Shown: piece after piece, positions 16,864 through 24,781 of the stretch | How positions within the stretch are numbered: the stretch's first letter is position 1 | How the letters are laid out: each line of letters opens with the position of its first letter | Assembly: GCF_000142905.1 (NCBI RefSeq) | Contig: NW_013657649.1 | Location: 310,001 to 374,000, forward strand | Origin: Thecamonas trahens ATCC 50062 | Lineage: Eukaryota; Protista; Apusomonadida | Length of the DNA: 64,000 nucleotides | Direction of reading: 5' to 3' | Translations under genes and position numbers: made by a program | The notes under the pieces: model-generated | What the model was told of the DNA's origin: nothing | The model's database searches: none | Seen by the model: the letters and a program-made list of their open reading frames with translations, nothing else

Positions 16864-18879
16864 CTACGACGGGATGGTGGTGGAGACGATGGAAATGGGA
16901 TTGAGCGGGCGCGACGAGTCGTCGACAGGCACCTTTTCGATGGCGAGGACGACGTCCAGGCCCTTTGTGACGCGGCCAAAGATGGTGTGCTTGCCGTCGA
17001 GCCAGGGGGTGGGGACGGTTGTGATAAAGAACTGCGAGGCGTTGGTGTTAGGCCCGGCGTTGGCCATGGAGAGGACACCCGGGGCGTCGTGCTTGAGGGT
17101 GGGCACAAACTCGTCGGCAAAGTCTGCGCCCCAGATGGACTCGCCGCCAGTGCCGTCGCCATCGGGGTCGCCGGTCTGGATCATGAACGATTTGATGACG
17201 CGATGGAAGACGACGCCGTCGTAGTACCCATCCGCGCAGTGGGTGGTAAAGTTCTTGACGGCCTTGGGAGCGGCGTCCGGGTAGAGCTCGAGGTGGACGT
17301 CGCCCATGGTGGTGTGGAGGACGACGGCGGCCGGGCCGGCAGCCGAGCCGGTGGCCTGCCCGGCGGCGCCGACGACGGTGACGAGCTCCTCGCGGGTGGG
17401 CTTCTCGTTAAAGACGTCGCGAGCGTCGTCGGCGTCGTCGGTGTCGAGGACAGGCTCGCGCGAGGTGAAGAGGTAGAACCGCGGTTTGCCGTAAGCAGCA
17501 GCAAAAAGGGTGGGGTCCTCGTGGGCGTCGTCGTCGTTGCGGACGGTGGCCATGGCGGACGAGCCTGCGCCGATGCGGACAAGCTTGGGCGCGCCCTGGA
17601 AGAGGGTGAGGGCGAGGAAGCGCTCGGACGACTCGACCTTGCCCAACAGGCGCTCGACGCGATTCGAGCGGAGGTTGACGACCTTGACGCCGGCGAGAGT
17701 CGGGTAGAGGAGGAAGCGCGAGGAGGCATCAAAGACGGCGTTGGAAGGCGGCGGGCCGGGCGGCGGGAGCGAGTCGCCGGCGGCGACGGCGGCGGCGAGG
17801 GCGGCGGCGGCGGCGGCGGCCTCGTTGTCGAGTGCCTTTTCGAGGGCAAAGCGACGGCCAAAGTCGATGTTGTCGAGGACGTAAGGCGAGGCCGGAGTCT
17901 GCTGGGCGCGGGCGACGACGGCGAGTGACTCGTCGTACTCACGGTAGAGCTTGCCGGAGAGGAAGCGGAAGACGCGGACGTGGCGGTCCGAGGCCATGAT
18001 GGCGAAGAGCTTGCCGTTGGGCGAGACGGCGAGCGAGGTGGCGACCGCGCCGGCGTCAGCGAGGGCGTAGAGAGCGGTGTCGCTCTTGAGTTCGTAGTCG
18101 AGGTAGTCGGGGGTGGCGCCATCGACGGGCGACCAGGTCTCGATGCCGCCGGCCATGTCGACCGAGACGACGGCGTCAAAGGCGGCGTTGTAGGCGAGGG
18201 CGGTGATGGGCGCGGTGTGCGGGAGGCGAAGGCGGTGGAGCGAGGCGAGCGGATCGGGCGCAGCCGGATCCAGAAGCCACACGCCAGGCTCTGCGGCATT
18301 GACATCGGCGAGGGCCAGGACGGGCGAGCCTGCGAGGAGCGGCGAGACAAAGGCGGCGGTGAGGACGACAAAAGGGAGCTTGACGATGGCGATCATGTCA
18401 AAGTTGACAATGTCAAAGAGCTTGACGACATGGCCATGAGCATGCTCAGCCGACTCGCCCACCACCACCAGCCGCCTCCCGCAGACAGAGACGGCCAGAG
18501 CCCGGAGCGATGCCGAGAGAGCCTTGTACTGCTTGACAAACTCGATGCCTGCAGGCGTCTTGTACCAGAACTTGACCACGCCATCCTGGGAGGCAGTGAT
18601 GAGGTAGTCGGTGTGGGAGACGGCGAGTGCTGCCACAGGCGTCCGATGCATGTACGACCGCTCGTACATGGTGGCCTTGGGCAGTCGGGCCAGGGCCTCA
18701 CTCCCTGGCGCCGACGAGGAGGTGGTGGTGGTGGAGGTGGAGGGTGTGGCCGTGGTGGCCGAGGTGGACGACTTGCGTGACCTGCGTCGCCGCCGGCTGG
18801 AGTGTGCCAGTGGCTTGGCCTTCTTGGTGGCGGTGGGGTTGGGCGCAGGGGGTGAGGGTGACCGCTTGCGGCGGGGCAT
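16864..18879 (-). CDS. PPWD1: Peptidylprolyl isomerase domain and WD-repeat protein 1 (CYP71-like)
   Basis: LPKATMYERSYMHR, YLITASQDGVVKFW, RDVFNEKPTREE, followed by cyclophilin domain FHRVIKSFMIQTGDP, SMANAGPNTNASQFFITTVPTPWLDGKHTIFGRV; 671 aa from ATG 18879. Confidence 0.95.
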   Translation of the reverse strand: MPRRKRSPSPPAPNPTATKKAKPLAHSSRRRRRSRKSSTSATTATPSTSTTTTSSSAPGSEALARLPKATMYERSYMHRTPVAALAVSHTDYLITASQDGVVKFWYKTPAGIEFVKQYKALSASLRALAVSVCGRRLVVVGESAEHAHGHVVKLFDIVNFDMIAIVKLPFVVLTAAFVSPLLAGSPVLALADVNAAEPGVWLLDPAAPDPLASLHRLRLPHTAPITALAYNAAFDAVVSVDMAGGIETWSPVDGATPDYLDYELKSDTALYALADAGAVATSLAVSPNGKLFAIMASDRHVRVFRFLSGKLYREYDESLAVVARAQQTPASPYVLDNIDFGRRFALEKALDNEAAAAAAALAAAVAAGDSLPPPGPPPSNAVFDASSRFLLYPTLAGVKVVNLRSNRVERLLGKVESSERFLALTLFQGAPKLVRIGAGSSAMATVRNDDDAHEDPTLFAAAYGKPRFYLFTSREPVLDTDDADDARDVFNEKPTREELVTVVGAAGQATGSAAGPAAVVLHTTMGDVHLELYPDAAPKAVKNFTTHCADGYYDGVVFHRVIKSFMIQTGDPDGDGTGGESIWGADFADEFVPTLKHDAPGVLSMANAGPNTNASQFFITTVPTPWLDGKHTIFGRVTKGLDVVLAIEKVPVDDSSRPLNPISIVSTTIPS

Positions 18880-19602
18880 GGTGAGGTGGGGGGGGGGTGG
18901 GGGTGGGGGGTGGGGGGAGTCGACGAAGTGGTGGANNNNNNNNNNNNNNNNNNNNNNNNNNNNNNNNNNNNNNNNNNNNNNNNNNNNNNNNNNNNNNNNN
19001 NNNNNNNNNNNNNNNNNNNNNNNNNNNNNNNNNNNNNNNNNNNNNNNNNNNNNNNNNNNNNNNNNNNNNNNNNNNNNNNNNNNNNNNNNNNNNNNNNNNN
19101 NNNNNNNNNNNNNNNNNNNNNNNNNNNNNNNNNNNNNNNNNNNNNNNNNNNNNNNNNNNNNNNNNNNNNNNNNNNNNNNNNNNNNNNNNNNNNNNNNNNN
19201 NNNNNNNNNNNNNNNNNNNNNNNNNNNNNNNNNNNNNNNNNNNNNNNNNNNNNNNNNNNNNNNNNNNNNNNNNNNNNNNNNNNNNNNNNNNNNNNNNNNN
19301 NNNNNNNNNNNNNNNNNNNNNNNNNNNNNNNNNNNNNNNNNNNNNNNNNNNNNNNNNNNNNNNNNNNNNNNNNNNNNNNNNNNNNNNNNNNNNNNNNNNN
19401 NNNNNNNNNNNNNNNNNNNNNNNNNNNNNNNNNNNNNNNNNNNNNNNNNNNNNNNNNNNNNNNNNNNNNNNNNNNNNNNNNNNNNNNNNNNNNNNNNNNN
19501 NNNNNNNNNNNNNNNNNNNNNNNNNNNNNNNNNNNNNNNNTGGGGGGGCCACCACAGCCACAGCCAGGGACACCTTGGACAGCACAGCCACCATAGACTC
19601 AC

Positions 19603-19690
19603 CACACACACACACACACACATACACACATACACACATACACACACACATACACACACACATACACACATACACACACATATACACACA
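19603..19690 (+). repeat. (CA)n/(CATA) microsatellite inside SAE1 intron
   Basis: Directly visible cacacacata-type array between branch-like GACTCAC (19596-19602) and the acceptor. Confidence 0.9.
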
Positions 19691-19696
19691 TTACAG

Positions 19697-20705
19697 GCGT
19701 GGCCGCACAGCAGGCGCTCGGGTCGGCCCGGGTGGCCATGGTCGGCTGCGACGGCCTGCACGGCGAGGTGGCCAAGAACCTGGTCCTGGCCGGCGTGGGC
19801 GCACTGGCGGTGTACGATGGCTGCTGCGTGGAAGAGGCCCATCTCGTGCCGCATGTTCTCCTCAACGGTGCTGATGCAGAGTCCATCGTCGGCTCCAGGA
19901 TGGACGCCGCTGTGGCTCCGGCTCTGGCTGAGCTCAATCCGCGGGTCGACGTCGTCGTCCTTGACCAGGCCGAGCTTACCGCAGACGCCCTGGCCAAGGC
20001 CGGCACCTCGGTTGTGCTCATCGGTGGCCTGCTGAGCGAGAATCCGCCTCTCCCGCCAAAGACGCCCTGGCTCTGGCCGACGCGCTGCACGACGCTGGCC
20101 TGGCCGTCTTTGTCTCGGGCGGCATGGGCATGGCCGGCTTCTTCCTCGCCGATCCGGGTGAGGCCTTTCACTACCTTGACACCAAGGCCGCCCGCAACGT
20201 CGCCGATGAGGCCGACGCCTCGCGCATCGCCTCGTACGTCCGCATCTCCGCCGCCATCCACGACTACCCGCTCTCGTCGCCAGCGCTCCGCCGCGCGCCC
20301 GAGCTCGCCTTTGCCATCGTCGCTCTCCTCCGCGCCGCAGCATCCGGCGCAGAGCCCGATCACGCTCGCCAGCTCTGGGCCGCTGCCGGCCCATTTGCGC
20401 GCCCCTCAGTGACCGATGCCACGCTCGAGCGGGCTGCTGCCGCCGCCAAGCTCGGCGCCTCGTTTGCCCCGGTCTCGGCCCTGGTCGGCGGCTTCCTCGC
20501 TCAGGACGTACTCAAGGTGGTGACCCACCGCGACGCCCCGGTCAACAACATGTTTATCTACGAGCCGCTCGGCGCCGACGGCCAGATTGTGCGGCTGCAT
20601 GCGCAGGCCGACGTCGCTCCGCAGGTCCGCAATACCACCGTTGCCGTCGCCCTTGACGCCGACGACTCTCTCGCTCCCACTCCCGCTCCCATGACCATCG
20701 AGTGA
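19697..20705 (+). CDS. SAE1: SUMO-activating enzyme subunit 1 (AOS1, ThiF family), last exon; apparent frameshift at ~20052-20054
   Basis: After acceptor TTACAG (19691-19696): (G)VAAQQALGSARVAMVGCDGLHGEVAKNLVLAGVG...LAELNPRVDV; C-terminus FAPVSALVGGFLAQDVLKVVTHRDAPVNNMFIY matches SAE1. One missing C restores ...PLPAKDALALADALH. First exon presumably in the gap. Confidence 0.85.
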
Positions 20706-20716
20706 GAAGAAGCCAG

Positions 20717-23245
20717 TTACGCGTCGTACGATGACGACGACGGCGACGACGACGACGGCCGCGAGTCAAACGAGACCCAGTCGGTCGGAAGCGGAAGCGC
20801 GCCGCGGGTGGCGGCGAGGACCTCACCCAGCGCAAGCACCTTCTCGCGATTGAGGTTCTTCCGCCGGGTGGCGGCCACAACGGCCGGATCGAGCCGCCGC
20901 CGCTTGGCCGCCACCTCGGAAAGACCCACCCGCGAGCTCTTGGCCTCGAGAAGCTCGGACGACGCCCGCTCAAAGAGCGTGAGCAGGTAGGCGTAGAGGC
21001 CAAGCGAGAAAAAGGCAAAGACGATGAAGAACAGCCGCCCGCCCGTCGTCCGCGGCGAGAGGTCGCCAAAGCCGACCGTCGACGACGTGACAACCGCAAA
21101 GTACACCGCGTTGCCGTAAGGCGTAATGTGCGACTCGAGGCCGTAGAAGACTCCAGCGGCAACCAGGTTCGAGACCAGGTAGATCAAGGCCACAACAAGG
21201 TAGGCAGAGCCCGACCAGTGCGAGAACTCGTGCCAGGTCGCCGACGTGCACTGGCACCGGTATTCGCTCTCCTCCTCCTCCTCCTCCTCCTCGTCATCGT
21301 CGTCGTCGTACGTGTCGTCGCTCTCATCGCTCTCGTCGTCGTGAGAGTCGCTTTCGCTCGCATCATACTCGATTGAGTAGCGAGTCAAAGCCAGTGTTGA
21401 CGTCGAGGTGTCCGAGTCCGGTCCAGACGCAGACAAGCTCGACGAGGTCATCCTCGCCAGCTGCTCCATGTCCAGCGAGAGGCGGCGCTTGGTGACGATG
21501 GCGACGGCAATGGAGAGGAGGATGGCGGCGCAAAACCCGTAGATGATGACAAAAACCCGACCGGCAGTGGTCTTGGGCGTCAGATCGCCGTAGCCGACGC
21601 CAAAAAGAGTGACGCAAAAGTAGACCGACTCGAACCACGACCAGTCCTCGGCGTAAGTGACGAGCGAGGAAAGGAGGGCAAGGATGATGAGGGCGACGAG
21701 GATGAATAGCAGGTCGCGAATCTCGCTGAGCGTCGGCGCGTCGAAAAAGTACCGCATGAACCCGCCGATCCGGTTGTTGCACCACTGGAGCTGCGGTGCT
21801 TTGCTCGGGCGAAAGGCCGGCTGGCCGGTCGCCCGCGCCACCGCGAGCGCATTCTGTCCGTCTGGCGAGTCATCAAAGAGCTCATGCGCGGCGTAGCGCG
21901 AGTTGTAAATCGCAGTGGCAACCGCAATGGCGTAGCCGCGGACAGCAAGGACGCCGACCGCAAAGACAAGGAAGACTCCCCGCGAGGTCTGGGTCGTCGG
22001 CGCAAAGTCGCCGAGCCCGATGGTGAAGACCGTGACAAAGGCCCAGTAGACCGACTCGAAGAACGACCACTCCTCGAGGCCGTAAAAAATGGCACCAAAG
22101 CCGAGAACCACGGCGAGGAAGACCAGAAAGGCGACAGAGATCTCCTTGACTGCGTCAAACGCGTTGTACAGCGCGTCGCGCCCGGCAAATGAGTCGGTGA
22201 CCGGCAGATCGTCGGCACCGACGACGCGGAGGAACATGTGCGTCGACGTCAGTCGCTTCGAAATGAGCACTCGCGGCGTGAGGAGGGCCAGCTGCTCCAC
22301 AACTGCAGGAGAGGCCGCAACCTCGGGCGTGAGCTCAAGGTCGCACGAGACATCGATCCACTCCGACGGCTGCGTCTCCGAGACCGACGACGACGACGAG
22401 GTTGACGACGAGACGTCGGCCGGGAGCGCCAGGTTATGGGCGCGGCCGTGAAACGGAATGTACACCGTGCCCACTAGATCGTCAGCGTTGACGCGGTCCC
22501 AGTCCCAGAGCTCGAGGGTGACGCCCTCGCGGACGCCGCCGGTAAAAGCCCGCGGGATGACAAAGACCGCGTCCCACATCGGGCGCTGCGAGCCGCGGAC
22601 AACCGGCGTCTGCCAGACAGGCGAGGCGAGGACGTTCGGACAGCAGGCCCACTTTGCAGCCTCGTAGGCCTTGCGCCAGCACGAGACACGGATGGCGGCC
22701 CGGTCGGCAGCCGAGACACGGACGTAGGGATCGATGGTGCCCTTGGGGAGTGACATGCGATCAACGACGAACTTGACTCTGGCCAAAGCCGACTCTGCCA
22801 TCTCATCAATGAGCAGACCAAGAACCACGACGCCTGTGACAGAGAAGACAACGACGGTAGCCTTGCCCGCATCGGTAGCCGGGGAGATGTCCCCGTAGCC
22901 AATGGTGGTCATGACGGCCGTGGTCAGATACAAAGCATCGATAAACGACAGATCCTCATAATGGGTAAAGAGACCAGCACCAAGAACAAAGGCCACTCCC
23001 GAGAGCACAGCTGCAAGTCGCAGCTTGGACGCATGCGCCCAGAGGCAAGCCAATGGCGAGGTATCCCACGGCAGCGCAAAGTCGAACACATGGCTGGACG
23101 ACCACGATGACGTCCACGATGACCTGCTGCCTGTCCTCGCCGTCGTGCCCGTCGTCGTCGTCATTGTCGCATGGTGAAGCCCGGACGAGGACTGCGTTGA
23201 CGCCCAGTCACTGCCCCATGGGTCGGCGGTGGATGTGGTCGACAT
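20717..23245 (-). CDS. K+ channel with four TM-P-TM pore units plus C2 domain
   Basis: 842-aa ORF with four filters (TTIGYGD, FTIGLGD, FGVGYGD, STVGFGD), each flanked by hydrophobic helices, and C2 motifs (DPYVRV, P.WD..F, LELWDWDRVNADDLVG) between P1 and P2. Confidence 0.9.
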   Translation of the reverse strand: MSTTSTADPWGSDWASTQSSSGLHHATMTTTTGTTARTGSRSSWTSSWSSSHVFDFALPWDTSPLACLWAHASKLRLAAVLSGVAFVLGAGLFTHYEDLSFIDALYLTTAVMTTIGYGDISPATDAGKATVVVFSVTGVVVLGLLIDEMAESALARVKFVVDRMSLPKGTIDPYVRVSAADRAAIRVSCWRKAYEAAKWACCPNVLASPVWQTPVVRGSQRPMWDAVFVIPRAFTGGVREGVTLELWDWDRVNADDLVGTVYIPFHGRAHNLALPADVSSSTSSSSSVSETQPSEWIDVSCDLELTPEVAASPAVVEQLALLTPRVLISKRLTSTHMFLRVVGADDLPVTDSFAGRDALYNAFDAVKEISVAFLVFLAVVLGFGAIFYGLEEWSFFESVYWAFVTVFTIGLGDFAPTTQTSRGVFLVFAVGVLAVRGYAIAVATAIYNSRYAAHELFDDSPDGQNALAVARATGQPAFRPSKAPQLQWCNNRIGGFMRYFFDAPTLSEIRDLLFILVALIILALLSSLVTYAEDWSWFESVYFCVTLFGVGYGDLTPKTTAGRVFVIIYGFCAAILLSIAVAIVTKRRLSLDMEQLARMTSSSLSASGPDSDTSTSTLALTRYSIEYDASESDSHDDESDESDDTYDDDDDEEEEEEEESEYRCQCTSATWHEFSHWSGSAYLVVALIYLVSNLVAAGVFYGLESHITPYGNAVYFAVVTSSTVGFGDLSPRTTGGRLFFIVFAFFSLGLYAYLLTLFERASSELLEAKSSRVGLSEVAAKRRRLDPAVVAATRRKNLNREKVLALGEVLAATRGALPLPTDWVSFDSRPSSSSPSSSSYDA

Positions 23246-24781
23246 GGGAAAGGGACGGAGGGGGAGGGGGAGCGGGAGGTGGAGTGGCTGGCGGCGGGCG
23301 GGCTCGGGGTGACAGTGGGCGTGGCGGTTGGGTGTGCGGAGGGAGGGCGCTTTTTTTTTGGTGGGGTAGGGTTTTATTTTTAGGAGGTCGGGAGGGGACG
23401 GGGGGTACGGGTTAGGGTAGGGGGTNNNNNNNNNNNNNNNNNNNNNNNNNNNNNNNNNNNNNNNNNNNNNNNNNNNNNNNNNNNNNNNNNNNNNNNNNNN
23501 NNNNNNNNNNNNNNNNNNNNNNNNNTTTTTTTTTTTATATATAATAACAACCCCCCCCCCCCCCCCCCCTTTTTTTTTTTTTTAGTTACAAGACATATAC
23601 AAAAAAAAAGGGTGTGCGGGCGGGGGGGGGCTCCGCCGCCCCCCCCCCCCCCCCCCCGCCCCCCTGGTGCGGGGGAGCAAAAAAAAAAAACAAATTCTTT
23701 TTTTTTTTTTTGGGCCCCCTTTCCCCCCCCCCCCCGGGGCTTTTTTTGGGAGGGGGAAGGGGAAGCCGACGGGGACGGGGATGGGGGGGACGGGGGTGGC
23801 AATCGGGATGGGAGAGGGGGGAGGGGGGGGGGAGAGAGAGAGAGAGAGATGGGGATGAGAGAGGAGGGGGGGGGAGAAGAGGGGGGGATGGACGGGAGGC
23901 AGGCTAGTGATCGAGGGCTAGCGACGGGACGGAAGGACGACTGGGCGGGGAGGAGAACGGATGGGGTAGGGGAAAGAAGGAGATACAGGGAGATTCATTG
24001 GGATAGAGTGAGGGGGGAGGGGGAAGAGGCAGATGAGGGAGGGCAGGAGGGAGGGTATCGGAGTGGACGTGGAGTACTACTGTAACCGATTTTTTTCCTC
24101 TTGCCCACGAATTAAACAGAACAGCAGGTGTTGGAAGATGGAAGGCGCGGAGAGTCGAATGACGGGACGATGAGGCTACGAGAGTGAGCATGGGTGTGAG
24201 TGGGGCAAAGCATTGAAGCTGTAGCCTGCCGCTTCGAGCGGGTCGCCTCCCACTGACCTGTCTCGTCTCGTAAAAGGTTGGAGGCTTTGATCTGGCCAGA
24301 ACCTGCACATCCACAGCCATCTACCGCCAGCAAAAGCCGCATGCTGACAAGAGCAGTAAGCCACGTCGATGGCACGTACAAGCAACGCGCTCCGTGGTCT
24401 GATGGTGAGGCGGCAAGTGTGGTGCAAGCTGACCCAGTTGCCGTGACATAGTCAACATGACCGTCCATTTTATGATCTCGCTGATCTCCATTCTCGTCGG
24501 TTCCTCACGCACCTTCGCGCCCCCCTCCTAGTCATCGCCAGCACCTCGCCCTTCACCACCCACACCATCCCAAAGCTCGCATCAAGCACCACCTATAGCC
24601 ATCTCGAACAGTATCCGATGTTTGTATAGCGAGAGTAGCAGCCTGCGTGCGTCGCTGCTCCGTTGACGAATCCGGCGGCAGCCAACGGACGAGTGACCGG
24701 CGAGCAGCGTGCGGGGCTGTCTGACGGGGCCGACGACGACAAGCAGACGTCACTCGGGGCCGACGGAGGCGCAGTGCGGCA

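What the first reader, a model, noticed from the sequence alone, without database searches (positions are those of the whole stretch)
20717..23245. Single-chain K+ channel with four pore loops ('K4P') and an asymmetric filter
Seen: four TM-P-TM units in one 842-aa ORF, with filters TIGYG (~22890-22910), TIGLG (~22010-22028), GVGYG (~21581-21610) and TVGFG (~21061-21084). P3 has Gly in place of the conserved Thr, and its pore helix is one residue shorter than the other three. Known: K+ pores need four P-loops, supplied by tetramers (1P) or dimers (K2P/TPK/TOK). Inference: this protein could form a monomeric, pseudo-tetrameric channel by duplication of a K2P, giving four different filter strands and possibly altered selectivity.
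Basis: partly seen in the sequence, partly recalled or inferred. Interest (0 to 1): 0.8.

Follow-up and report, generated by a model that had tools for sequence, protein, structure and literature searches.

The report
Single-chain four-pore potassium channel gene
A gene of the marine protist Thecamonas trahens puts all four pore loops of a potassium channel, plus a calcium-sensor-type C2 domain, into one protein chain, a design I found described in no paper although similar genes occur in several protist groups.

Summary
ORF 20717-23245 (-) is Thecamonas trahens AMSG_07212. It has four significant Ion_trans_2 pore modules, eight hydrophobic helices, and filters TIGYG, TIGLG, GVGYG and TVGFG at the stated places. 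The pore helix of unit 3 is one residue short. A C2 domain lies between units 1 and 2.

AlphaFold2 models of this protein and of a 48%-identical ortholog from a Tara Oceans scaffold both place the four units in one ring. That ring superposes on all four repeats of Nav or Cav chains (354-405 residues, rmsd 4.0-9.1 A). So a monomer can close a pore in the models.

The architecture is not an annotation accident. Thecamonas has at least five more loci with four pore units. Four of them match this gene unit by unit. Among the 150 best hits from 1.84 billion proteins, 35 have four units, including dinoflagellate, euglenozoan and MMETSP sequences.

Origin by doubling of a two-pore gene is visible in many of those proteins but not in this one. 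Selectivity, stoichiometry and calcium gating are untested.

This scan reached the same reading earlier on a paralog on another contig. I rate it a new variant of a known kind, interest about 0.65.

The parts
20717..23245 (-). Whole ORF, 842 aa plus stop. It is Thecamonas trahens AMSG_07212 and encodes a four-pore-domain channel.
   Evidence: It is 100% identical to NCBI protein P0001 over 95% of its length.
22754..23026 (-). Pore unit 1 (aa 74-164): M1, pore helix, filter TIGYG (22892-22906), and a long M2 helix.
   Evidence: Pfam stretch 86-151. Model helices 74-97, 101-113 and 125-164, pLDDT above 90. Superposes on NaK2K and MthK pore subunits at rmsd 1.5 A over 82-92 residues, Z 14.
22187..22753 (-). 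Cytosolic C2 domain (aa 165-353) between M2 of unit 1 and M1 of unit 2. The chain enters at the DPYV strand and leaves after the L-x-V-V-G-A-x-x-L-P strand, so the strand order looks circularly permuted at Ca2+-binding loop 1.
   Evidence: Pfam C2 E 4.5e-8. hhalign against ordinary C2 repeats: 98% probability, E 2.5e-13, plus a second alignment of the C-terminal strands to the C2 N-terminus at P 0.008. Model strands 173-177 through 336-345. C2 structures match at Z 8.8-9.6 over model 167-335. Asp 172, 248, 250, 256 and 351 are present and conserved in four family members.
21875..22186 (-). Pore unit 2 (aa 354-457), filter TIGLG (22010-22024).
   Evidence: Superposes on SthK, Slo2.2 and AKT1 pore modules at rmsd 1.1-1.5 A over 88-90 residues.
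21731..21874 (-). Linker between units 2 and 3 (aa 458-505). It is cytosolic and modelled with low confidence.
   Evidence: pLDDT 43-58. It stays in frame in the ortholog, with little sequence conservation.
21428..21730 (-). Pore unit 3 (aa 506-606), filter GVGYG (21587-21601). Gly replaces the filter Thr, and the pore helix region is one residue shorter.
21218..21427 (-). Acidic linker between units 3 and 4 (aa 607-676), with a conserved TRYSIEY motif (21365-21385) and a run of 13 Asp/Glu starting at aa 647.
   Evidence: pLDDT 40-48.
20894..21217 (-). Pore unit 4 (aa 677-784), filter TVGFG (21065-21079).
20720..20893 (-). C-terminal tail (aa 785-842), with motif LPLPTDWVSF (20768-20797) that is identical in the ortholog.

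Best explanation
The gene encodes a single-chain, eight-helix, four-pore-loop K+ channel. Four non-identical M1-P-M2 modules of the ordinary K+ channel pore family fold side by side, in sequence order, around one central axis. One polypeptide therefore supplies all four selectivity-filter strands (shown in models only). All four strands keep the G-[YLF]-G-D backbone part of the filter, and three of four keep the Thr hydroxyl of the innermost site. The pore is therefore most likely K+-selective or at least K+-preferring (inferred). Each module starts and ends in the cytoplasm, so all linkers are cytosolic. The first linker is a C2 domain with the five canonical Ca2+-binding aspartates. Its chain is joined to the inner helix of unit 1 and the outer helix of unit 2 at the two halves of Ca2+-binding loop 1. 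I infer that Ca2+, possibly together with acidic lipid, acts on the gate through this tether, giving a Ca2+-activated K+ conductance. The protein belongs to a family of C2-bearing four-pore channels. That family was already four-pore in its common ancestor and has at least five members matching unit by unit in Thecamonas.
For: Four Ion_trans_2 stretches and one C2 in one ORF. Eight hydrophobic segments and four filters. A Tara scaffold carries an uninterrupted 886-aa ORF, 48% identical, with the same layout. AlphaFold2 model: pTM 0.66, membrane units at pLDDT above 90; ortholog model pTM 0.63. The best structural matches are whole four-repeat chains: Cav1.2 8fhs_A, Z 15.3, rmsd 4.3 A, 369 residues, model 72-764 against chain 265-1529; also Cav3.1, Z 15.7, rmsd 9.1 A over 377 residues, and Cav1.1, Z 13.9, rmsd 5.1 A over 384 residues. 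For the ortholog: Nav1.7, Z 18.2, rmsd 4.5 A, 371 residues; Nav1.5, 376 residues; Cav3.1, 354 residues. K2P and TPC chains lie on adjacent units 2-3. Single units fit NaK2K and MthK pore subunits at 1.5 A. The own genome holds five more loci with four or five pore units and one with four on a contig-end fragment. Four of them match this gene unit by unit. Units cluster by position in the tree, with SH-aLRT 94, 88 and 86 for u1, u2 and u3.
Against: No functional, expression or stoichiometry data exist for this protein. The ring is a prediction, and both models used essentially the same 36-sequence alignment. Coordinates could not be inspected, so filter geometry and pore radius are unknown. For mostly helical models, Z values of 13-15 are near the aligner's stated background; the argument rests on aligned length and range, not on Z. 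Unit 3 has Gly for Thr and a deleted pore-helix residue, which might distort that strand. The secondary hhalign match that supports the permuted C2 strand order is weak (P 0.008). The short-piece searches were not significant.
Confidence: 0.65

Rival explanations
1. The chain has four pore units but works as an oligomer. Units from two or more chains would combine, for example as a domain-swapped dimer with two pores, as KtrB and TrkH dimers have, or with pores formed between chains.
For: K2P channels swap their M1 helices between chains, and KtrB/TrkH protomers dimerise (PMC12059179). The linkers here are long (about 190, 50 and 70 residues) and would allow inter-chain arrangements. A monomer prediction cannot show oligomers.
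Against: Both monomer models close the ring on their own with a confident inter-unit arrangement (pTM 0.63-0.66). Other four-pore proteins such as P0010 (382 aa) have linkers of about 2-10 residues, which favours neighbouring units of one chain packing side by side. A dimer of complete pores would not contradict the main reading.
Confidence: 0.15
2. The pore is not K+-selective, or unit 3 is degenerate. Losing the Thr hydroxyl and one pore-helix residue in unit 3 would give a weakly selective cation channel or a poorly conducting protein.
For: GVGYG plus a one-residue deletion in unit 3. In the closest relatives the first filter residue of units 2 and 3 is also variable: Met/Ser in the ortholog, Ala/Gln in P0005. 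So the innermost site is under relaxed constraint in this clade. From general knowledge: channels with altered first filter residues, such as HCN (CIGYG) and NaK, select poorly.
Against: All four strands keep G-x-G-D, and three keep Thr. The unit 3 module is modelled at pLDDT 84-94. It is conserved as a module across ortholog and paralogs.
Confidence: 0.15
3. The ORF yields two separate two-pore proteins (units 1-C2-2 and units 3-4), through an internal start, splicing or cleavage. These would then dimerise like K2P channels.
For: The unit 2-3 linker is poorly conserved and modelled with low confidence. No RNA data were available here.
Against: The frame is uninterrupted for 842 codons, and NCBI models one mRNA. 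The ortholog also has one 886-codon ORF. Paralog C38 has all four units in one 952-codon frame. Each unit position forms its own clade. Four-pore proteins of other protists come from single assembled transcripts: Entosiphon Trinity contigs and MMETSP.
Confidence: 0.05

Closest known systems
Tandem-pore K+ channels: animal K2P/KCNK, plant TPK, fungal TOK1
   Same: Ion_trans_2 pore modules joined in tandem with non-identical filters such as TIGYG and TIGLG, and no voltage sensor. The best sequence matches among solved structures are TOK1 (E 3.6e-19) and K2P chains. K2P chains superpose on two adjacent units.
   Different: Four units per chain instead of two, so no partner chain is needed in the models. 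There is no extracellular cap: only about 3 residues separate M1 from the pore helix. A C2 domain sits in the first inter-unit linker. There are no TOK-type extra N-terminal helices.
Trk/Ktr/HKT K+ transporters (KtrB, TrkH)
   Same: One polypeptide with four non-identical M1-P-M2 repeats forms a pseudo-tetrameric pore (PMC12059179).
   Different: Those keep only one Gly per pore loop and select poorly. This protein keeps the full x-x-G-[YLF]-G-D in all four loops. Pfam gives Ion_trans_2 and no Trk-type family. No Trk/Ktr chain is among the 50 best structural matches.
Four-repeat Nav/Cav/NALCN channels
   Same: One chain with four different repeats around one pore. These are the best whole-model structural matches, with the same cyclic order of repeats.
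   Different: Their repeats have six helices including voltage sensors, and their filters are EEEE or DEKA type. Here the repeats are bare two-helix pore modules with K+ channel filters.
Ca2+-regulated K+ channels (BK and MthK via RCK domains, SK via calmodulin, plant TPK1 via EF hands)
   Same: A cytosolic Ca2+-binding module attached to the inner helix is the likely regulator. Some other four-pore proteins carry EF hands instead (P0016).
   Different: The sensor would be a C2 domain inserted between two pore units and opened at its Ca2+ loop. I know of no K+ channel with that arrangement, and I found none in the held papers.

Membership tests
K+ channel pore family (Pfam Ion_trans_2, PF07885) | An M1 - pore helix - filter - M2 module that matches the profile above its cut-off | tested here: met
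   181.6 bits against a cut-off of 22.5, in four stretches. Unit 1 fits MthK and NaK2K subunits at rmsd 1.5 A.
K+ channel pore family (Pfam Ion_trans_2, PF07885) | Signature filter T-[VI]-G-[YFL]-G | tested here: met
   Met in units 1, 2 and 4. Unit 3 has G-V-G-Y-G.
K2P / KCNK two-pore-domain channels | Two pore domains per subunit, with dimeric assembly | tested here: not met
   There are four pore domains per chain. Assembly state cannot be tested with these tools.
K2P / KCNK two-pore-domain channels | Extracellular helical cap between M1 and the first pore helix | tested here: not met
   M1 ends at aa 97 and the pore helix starts at aa 101, which leaves no room for a cap.
Trk/Ktr/HKT superfamily | Four M1-P-M2 repeats in one chain | tested here: met
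Trk/Ktr/HKT superfamily | Reduced filters (a single conserved Gly per loop) and sequence membership in Trk-type families | tested here: not met
   All loops have the full G-x-G-D. No Trk-type Pfam or NCBIfam hit.
C2 domain (PF00168) | Eight-stranded beta sandwich matching the profile | tested here: met
   33.7 bits against a cut-off of 22. C2 structures match at Z 8.8-9.6, rmsd 2.6-3.3 A, 99-107 residues.
C2 domain (PF00168) | Five acidic Ca2+ ligands in loops 1 and 3 | tested here: met
   Asp 351, 172, 248, 250 and 256, by alignment to the PKC and synaptotagmin pattern. They are conserved in four relatives. Ca2+ binding itself was not tested.
C2 domain (PF00168) | Strand order of topology I or II | tested here: inconclusive
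   The strand that normally precedes DPYV lies at the C-terminal end (aa 336-345), just before M1 of unit 2. Sequential structural alignments stop at aa 335 and skip the first ~20 residues of ordinary C2 chains. Coordinates could not be inspected.

The most novel reading that the evidence does not exclude
This is a natural monomeric K+ channel. Its four non-equivalent filter strands are encoded in one gene, and its gate is driven by a C2 domain whose Ca2+-binding loop 1 is split. One half of the loop continues from the inner helix of unit 1, and the other half leads into the outer helix of unit 2. Ca2+ binding would clamp the two halves together and pull directly on the pore helices. That would be a Ca2+-gating mechanism unlike RCK, calmodulin or EF-hand control.
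Probability: 0.3. Interest if true: 0.85.

Novelty: new variant of a known kind. Interest (0 to 1): 0.65.

Why it matters
All textbook K+ channels with the canonical filter are tetramers or dimers. To change one filter strand at a time, biophysicists have to build artificial concatemers. A natural single-chain channel would let each of the four strands be mutated separately in a native context. It would also show how much asymmetry a K+ filter tolerates, for example Gly, Ser, Gln, Met or Ala at the innermost site in one or two strands.

In evolutionary terms it parallels, in bare pore modules, the two rounds of duplication that produced Nav and Cav channels. The data here suggest that the step from two to four pores happened several times in protists. 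The C2 insertion may add a new way of coupling Ca2+ to a K+ pore in a lineage that is sister to animals and fungi.

Tried and rejected
Searches that added nothing:
- Word-indexed protein searches found only the NCBI model and the Tara ortholog. This held for the whole protein, the 36-sequence alignment at E 1e-20 and the C2 region alone.
- The metagenome contig scan confirmed no relative.
- The ESM Atlas gave no hit by features and only low-TM matches by structure.
- Foldseek against the PDB returned only K2P chains over about 215 columns, with no E-value at or below 0.001. The exhaustive VIA-align search was needed to see the four-repeat matches.
- NCBIfam gave only sub-threshold bacterial K+ channel models.
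- The neighbours of the minimal four-pore gene P0010 had no Pfam hit, so its domain of life stays unknown.

Tests that were not significant:
- phmmer with short pieces of the C2 insert against multi-C2 proteins was not significant, E 0.2-2.

Readings rejected:
- Reading VKFVVDRMSLP (aa 157-167) as the ordinary first C2 strand: both models make it the end of the M2 helix, and it is not conserved in paralogs.
- Origin by recent doubling of a two-pore gene, for this gene only.

Literature: ten full-text searches found no paper describing a natural K+ channel with four canonical pore domains in one chain. The library holds open-access papers and bioRxiv only, so this is not proof of absence.

Complex prediction was not used, because a homodimer would exceed its size limit.
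Full report
WHAT IS THERE. The window is G000:C31:310001-374000 of Thecamonas trahens ATCC 50062. The DNA is about 65% G+C and has several N gaps. One search lists one ORF at 20717-23245 on the minus strand, 842 aa. It is 100% identical to NCBI protein AMSG_07212 (P0001, 809 aa, named only 'uncharacterized' or 'C2 domain-containing'). The two differ only at the N-terminus. NCBI splices in a short upstream exon at 24171-24191, across the N gap at 23426-23525. Everything from residue ~45 onward is one exon in both readings.

CHECK OF THE OBSERVATION. Pfam finds Ion_trans_2 at E 2.3e-54 in four separate stretches, and a C2 domain at E 4.5e-8. A hydropathy scan finds eight hydrophobic segments, in pairs around four filter motifs:
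- TIGYG, aa 114-118
- TIGLG, aa 408-412
- GVGYG, aa 549-553
- TVGFG, aa 723-727

Unit 3 has Gly at the first filter position. Its pore-helix region is one residue shorter than in units 1, 2 and 4, and shorter than unit 3 of the ortholog and of paralog P0005.

THE GENE MODEL IS REAL. Four lines of evidence support it.
- A Tara Oceans scaffold (L001) carries an uninterrupted 886-codon ORF, 48% identical. It has the same order of four units, the C2 domain, an acidic linker and a C-terminal LPLPTDWVSF motif.
- Scanning the Thecamonas assembly with Ion_trans_2 gives 45 matches. They include further clusters of four units at C38 (one 952-codon frame; this is P0005, XP_013755670.1), C14 (two loci), C29, C27 and C126.
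- Units of the C38, C29 and both C14 loci mostly match units 1 to 4 of this gene best in the same order.
- In a maximum-likelihood tree of single units, first, second and third units form position-specific groups (SH-aLRT 94, 88, 86). Those groups hold this gene, the ortholog, P0005, P0008 and the Thecamonas paralogs from C14 and C29.

So the common ancestor of this family already had four units. The C2 domain between units 1 and 2 is shared by L001, P0005 and P0008. P0007 and P0012, which look N-terminally truncated, carry a C2 domain before their first detected unit.

HOW WIDE THE ARCHITECTURE IS. An exhaustive HMMER search of 1.84 billion representative proteins gave 7450 hits. I counted units in the best 150 with an HMM built from the four units of this protein. 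The result was 35 proteins with four units, 14 with three, 101 with two and one with five. Pfam confirmed four stretches in every four-unit protein I rechecked.

The four-unit proteins whose source could be traced include:
- Durusdinium trenchii, a dinoflagellate (P0034)
- Trinity transcripts of Entosiphon sulcatum, Euglenozoa (P0035, P0042)
- MMETSP transcripts (P0029, P0053)
- EukProt entries (P0011, P0039)
- many Tara and JGI metagenome contigs

The transcript-derived ones show that four units on one mRNA occur in other protists. In many of these proteins, units 1 and 3 and units 2 and 4 are each other's closest relatives. Internal scores reach 200-270 for those pairs against about 100 for the other pairs, and they form sister pairs in the tree. 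These are doublings of a two-pore gene, and they happened more than once. The present gene, its ortholog and P0005 show no such signal. Here the four units are 27-45% identical in all pairings. How this family reached four units is therefore not recoverable from the data.

CAN ONE CHAIN CLOSE A PORE? AlphaFold2 with a 36-sequence alignment gave mean pLDDT 73.5 and pTM 0.66. All twelve membrane and pore helices are at pLDDT about 85-98. Low confidence is confined to the N-terminus, one C2 loop, the two later linkers and the C-terminus.

Against 48,161 representative PDB chains, the best matches are whole four-repeat channels:
- Cav3.1 6kzp_A: Z 15.7, rmsd 9.1 A, 377 residues
- Cav1.2 8fhs_A: Z 15.3, rmsd 4.3 A, 369 residues, model 72-764 against chain 265-1529 (roughly IS5 to IVS6)
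- Cav1.1 3jbr_A: Z 13.9, rmsd 5.1 A, 384 residues

Four units of about 92 residues make 368 residues. So all four units are superposed at once and in order.

I repeated the test with the ortholog. The model had pTM 0.63. The matches were Nav1.7 at Z 18.2, rmsd 4.5 A over 371 residues; Nav1.5 over 376 residues; Cav3.1 over 354 residues; and Cav1.2 over 405 residues. K2P and TPC chains lie on the adjacent units 2 and 3. Single units fit NaK2K and MthK pore subunits at rmsd 1.5 A.

Three caveats apply. Z values of this size are near the aligner's stated background for helical proteins. Both models rest on essentially the same alignment. A monomer prediction cannot exclude oligomers.

THE C2 DOMAIN. 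This finding did not mention it, but it is the main clue to regulation. The inner helix of unit 1 runs as one helix from aa 125 to 164 and leads straight into the strand DPYVR (173-177). The sandwich follows, with strands at 223-231, 241-248, 256-264, 297-302, 325-332 and 336-345. The last strand, of the form L-x-V-V-G-A-x-x-L-P followed by V-T-D-x-x-x-G, leads into the outer helix of unit 2 from aa 354. The ortholog model is the same.

In ordinary C2 domains that last strand and half-loop come immediately before DPYV. Several results fit a permuted order:
- hhalign of the insert family against ordinary C2 repeats gives the core match (98% probability, E 2.5e-13). It also gives a second, weak alignment of the C-terminal strands to the C2 N-terminus (P 0.008).
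- phmmer against the PDB shows the same pattern with dysferlin and PKC-gamma.
- Sequential structural alignments to C2 domains (Z 8.8-9.6) stop at aa 335 and skip the first ~20 residues of the C2 chains.

The five canonical Ca2+ ligands are present (Asp 351, 172, 248, 250, 256) and conserved in four family members. So the domain looks cut open in Ca2+-binding loop 1, with each half tied to a pore helix. I rate this as likely but not proven.

HOW IT MOST LIKELY WORKS.
- Shown: four K+ channel pore modules and a C2 domain in one conserved ORF.
- Shown in models only: a sequential pseudo-tetramer.
- Inferred: K+ selectivity. All four strands keep the backbone-carbonyl part of the filter and the following Asp, and three of four keep the Thr hydroxyl.
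- Inferred: cytosolic location of all linkers, because each module starts and ends inside the cell.
- Inferred: Ca2+ or lipid control through the C2 tether on the inner helix of unit 1.
- Speculative: a role in repolarising the cell after Ca2+ entry. Thecamonas has Nav/Cav-type channels according to PMC5824947 and PMC6259924, which I only saw listed.

The first filter residue of units 2 and 3 varies in this clade: Thr/Gly here, Met/Ser in the ortholog, Ala/Gln in P0005. This suggests that the innermost ion site tolerates asymmetry.

COMPARISON WITH WHAT IS KNOWN. By sequence, the nearest solved structures are fungal TOK1 (E 3.6e-19) and K2P channels. This protein fails two defining features of K2P. 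It has four units per chain, not two, and it has no extracellular cap.

In those, one chain holds four M1-P-M2 repeats, but the filters are reduced to one Gly each (PMC12059179). Here the filters are canonical and no Trk-type family matches.

The closest structural analogues are Nav and Cav channels, which have voltage sensors and different filters. From my own knowledge, engineered tandem tetramers of K+ channels conduct, so a covalent four-unit chain is feasible.

Ten full-text searches found no paper on a natural channel of this kind. A 2026 paper on a viral two-pore channel treats tandem pairs as the special case and mentions nothing beyond them (PMC13715775). The library covers open-access papers and bioRxiv only.

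VERDICT. The sequences are already in public databases but are unnamed or misnamed. This scan had already flagged and followed up the C38 paralog with the same conclusion (s1-746484). I class it as a new variant of a known kind, tandem-pore K+ channels carried to a full single-chain pseudo-tetramer, with an unusual C2 insertion.

Noticed in passing
G000:C38:84888-86936 (L032), C14:51057-53236 (L033), C14:315710-318556 (L034), C29:195279-197326 (L035), C27:45293-46896 (L036), C126:767-1579 (L037): The Thecamonas genome holds six further clusters of four or five Ion_trans_2 pore units. C38 has all four in one 952-codon frame. C126 is a 2.9-kb contig that ends next to the gene.
   Followed up: partly
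L034:2682-3720 (G000:C14, about 316700-317700): This locus shows five pore units. Units 2 and 3 have an identical pore helix and filter (…WRLLDAFYWAVITLF TIGYGD) and lie in overlapping open frames. It is either a very recent tandem duplication or an assembly artefact.
   Followed up: no
P0010 (L038:1519-2667, JGI metagenome 3300040806): A minimal 382-aa protein with four canonical pore units joined by linkers of only about 2-10 residues. Its units 1/3 and 2/4 are near-duplicates. The neighbouring gene has no Pfam hit, so the organism is unknown.
   Followed up: partly
window 23426-23525 and 24171-24191: NCBI's gene model takes its start codon from a short exon beyond a 100-N assembly gap. The ORF's own ATG at 23245 gives a 33-residue longer, low-complexity N-terminus. 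Which start is used is open.
   Followed up: partly
window 21365-21385, 21267-21305 and 20768-20797: Three short features are conserved with the Tara ortholog and have no assigned role: TRYSIEY, a run of 13 Asp/Glu in the unit 3-4 linker, and the C-terminal LPLPTDWVSF.
   Followed up: no
P0028, P0030, P0069 (two-pore proteins among the hits): In the unit tree, the second units of these two-pore proteins group with the fourth units of the Thecamonas family (SH-aLRT 81-86). This is a weak hint about where units 3-4 came from.
   Followed up: no
window 16864-20394 (-): The neighbouring long ORF, which ends in a cyclophilin-type sequence, is interrupted by a 605-N gap (18936-19540). A (CA)n-type microsatellite lies next to the gap.
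   Followed up: no
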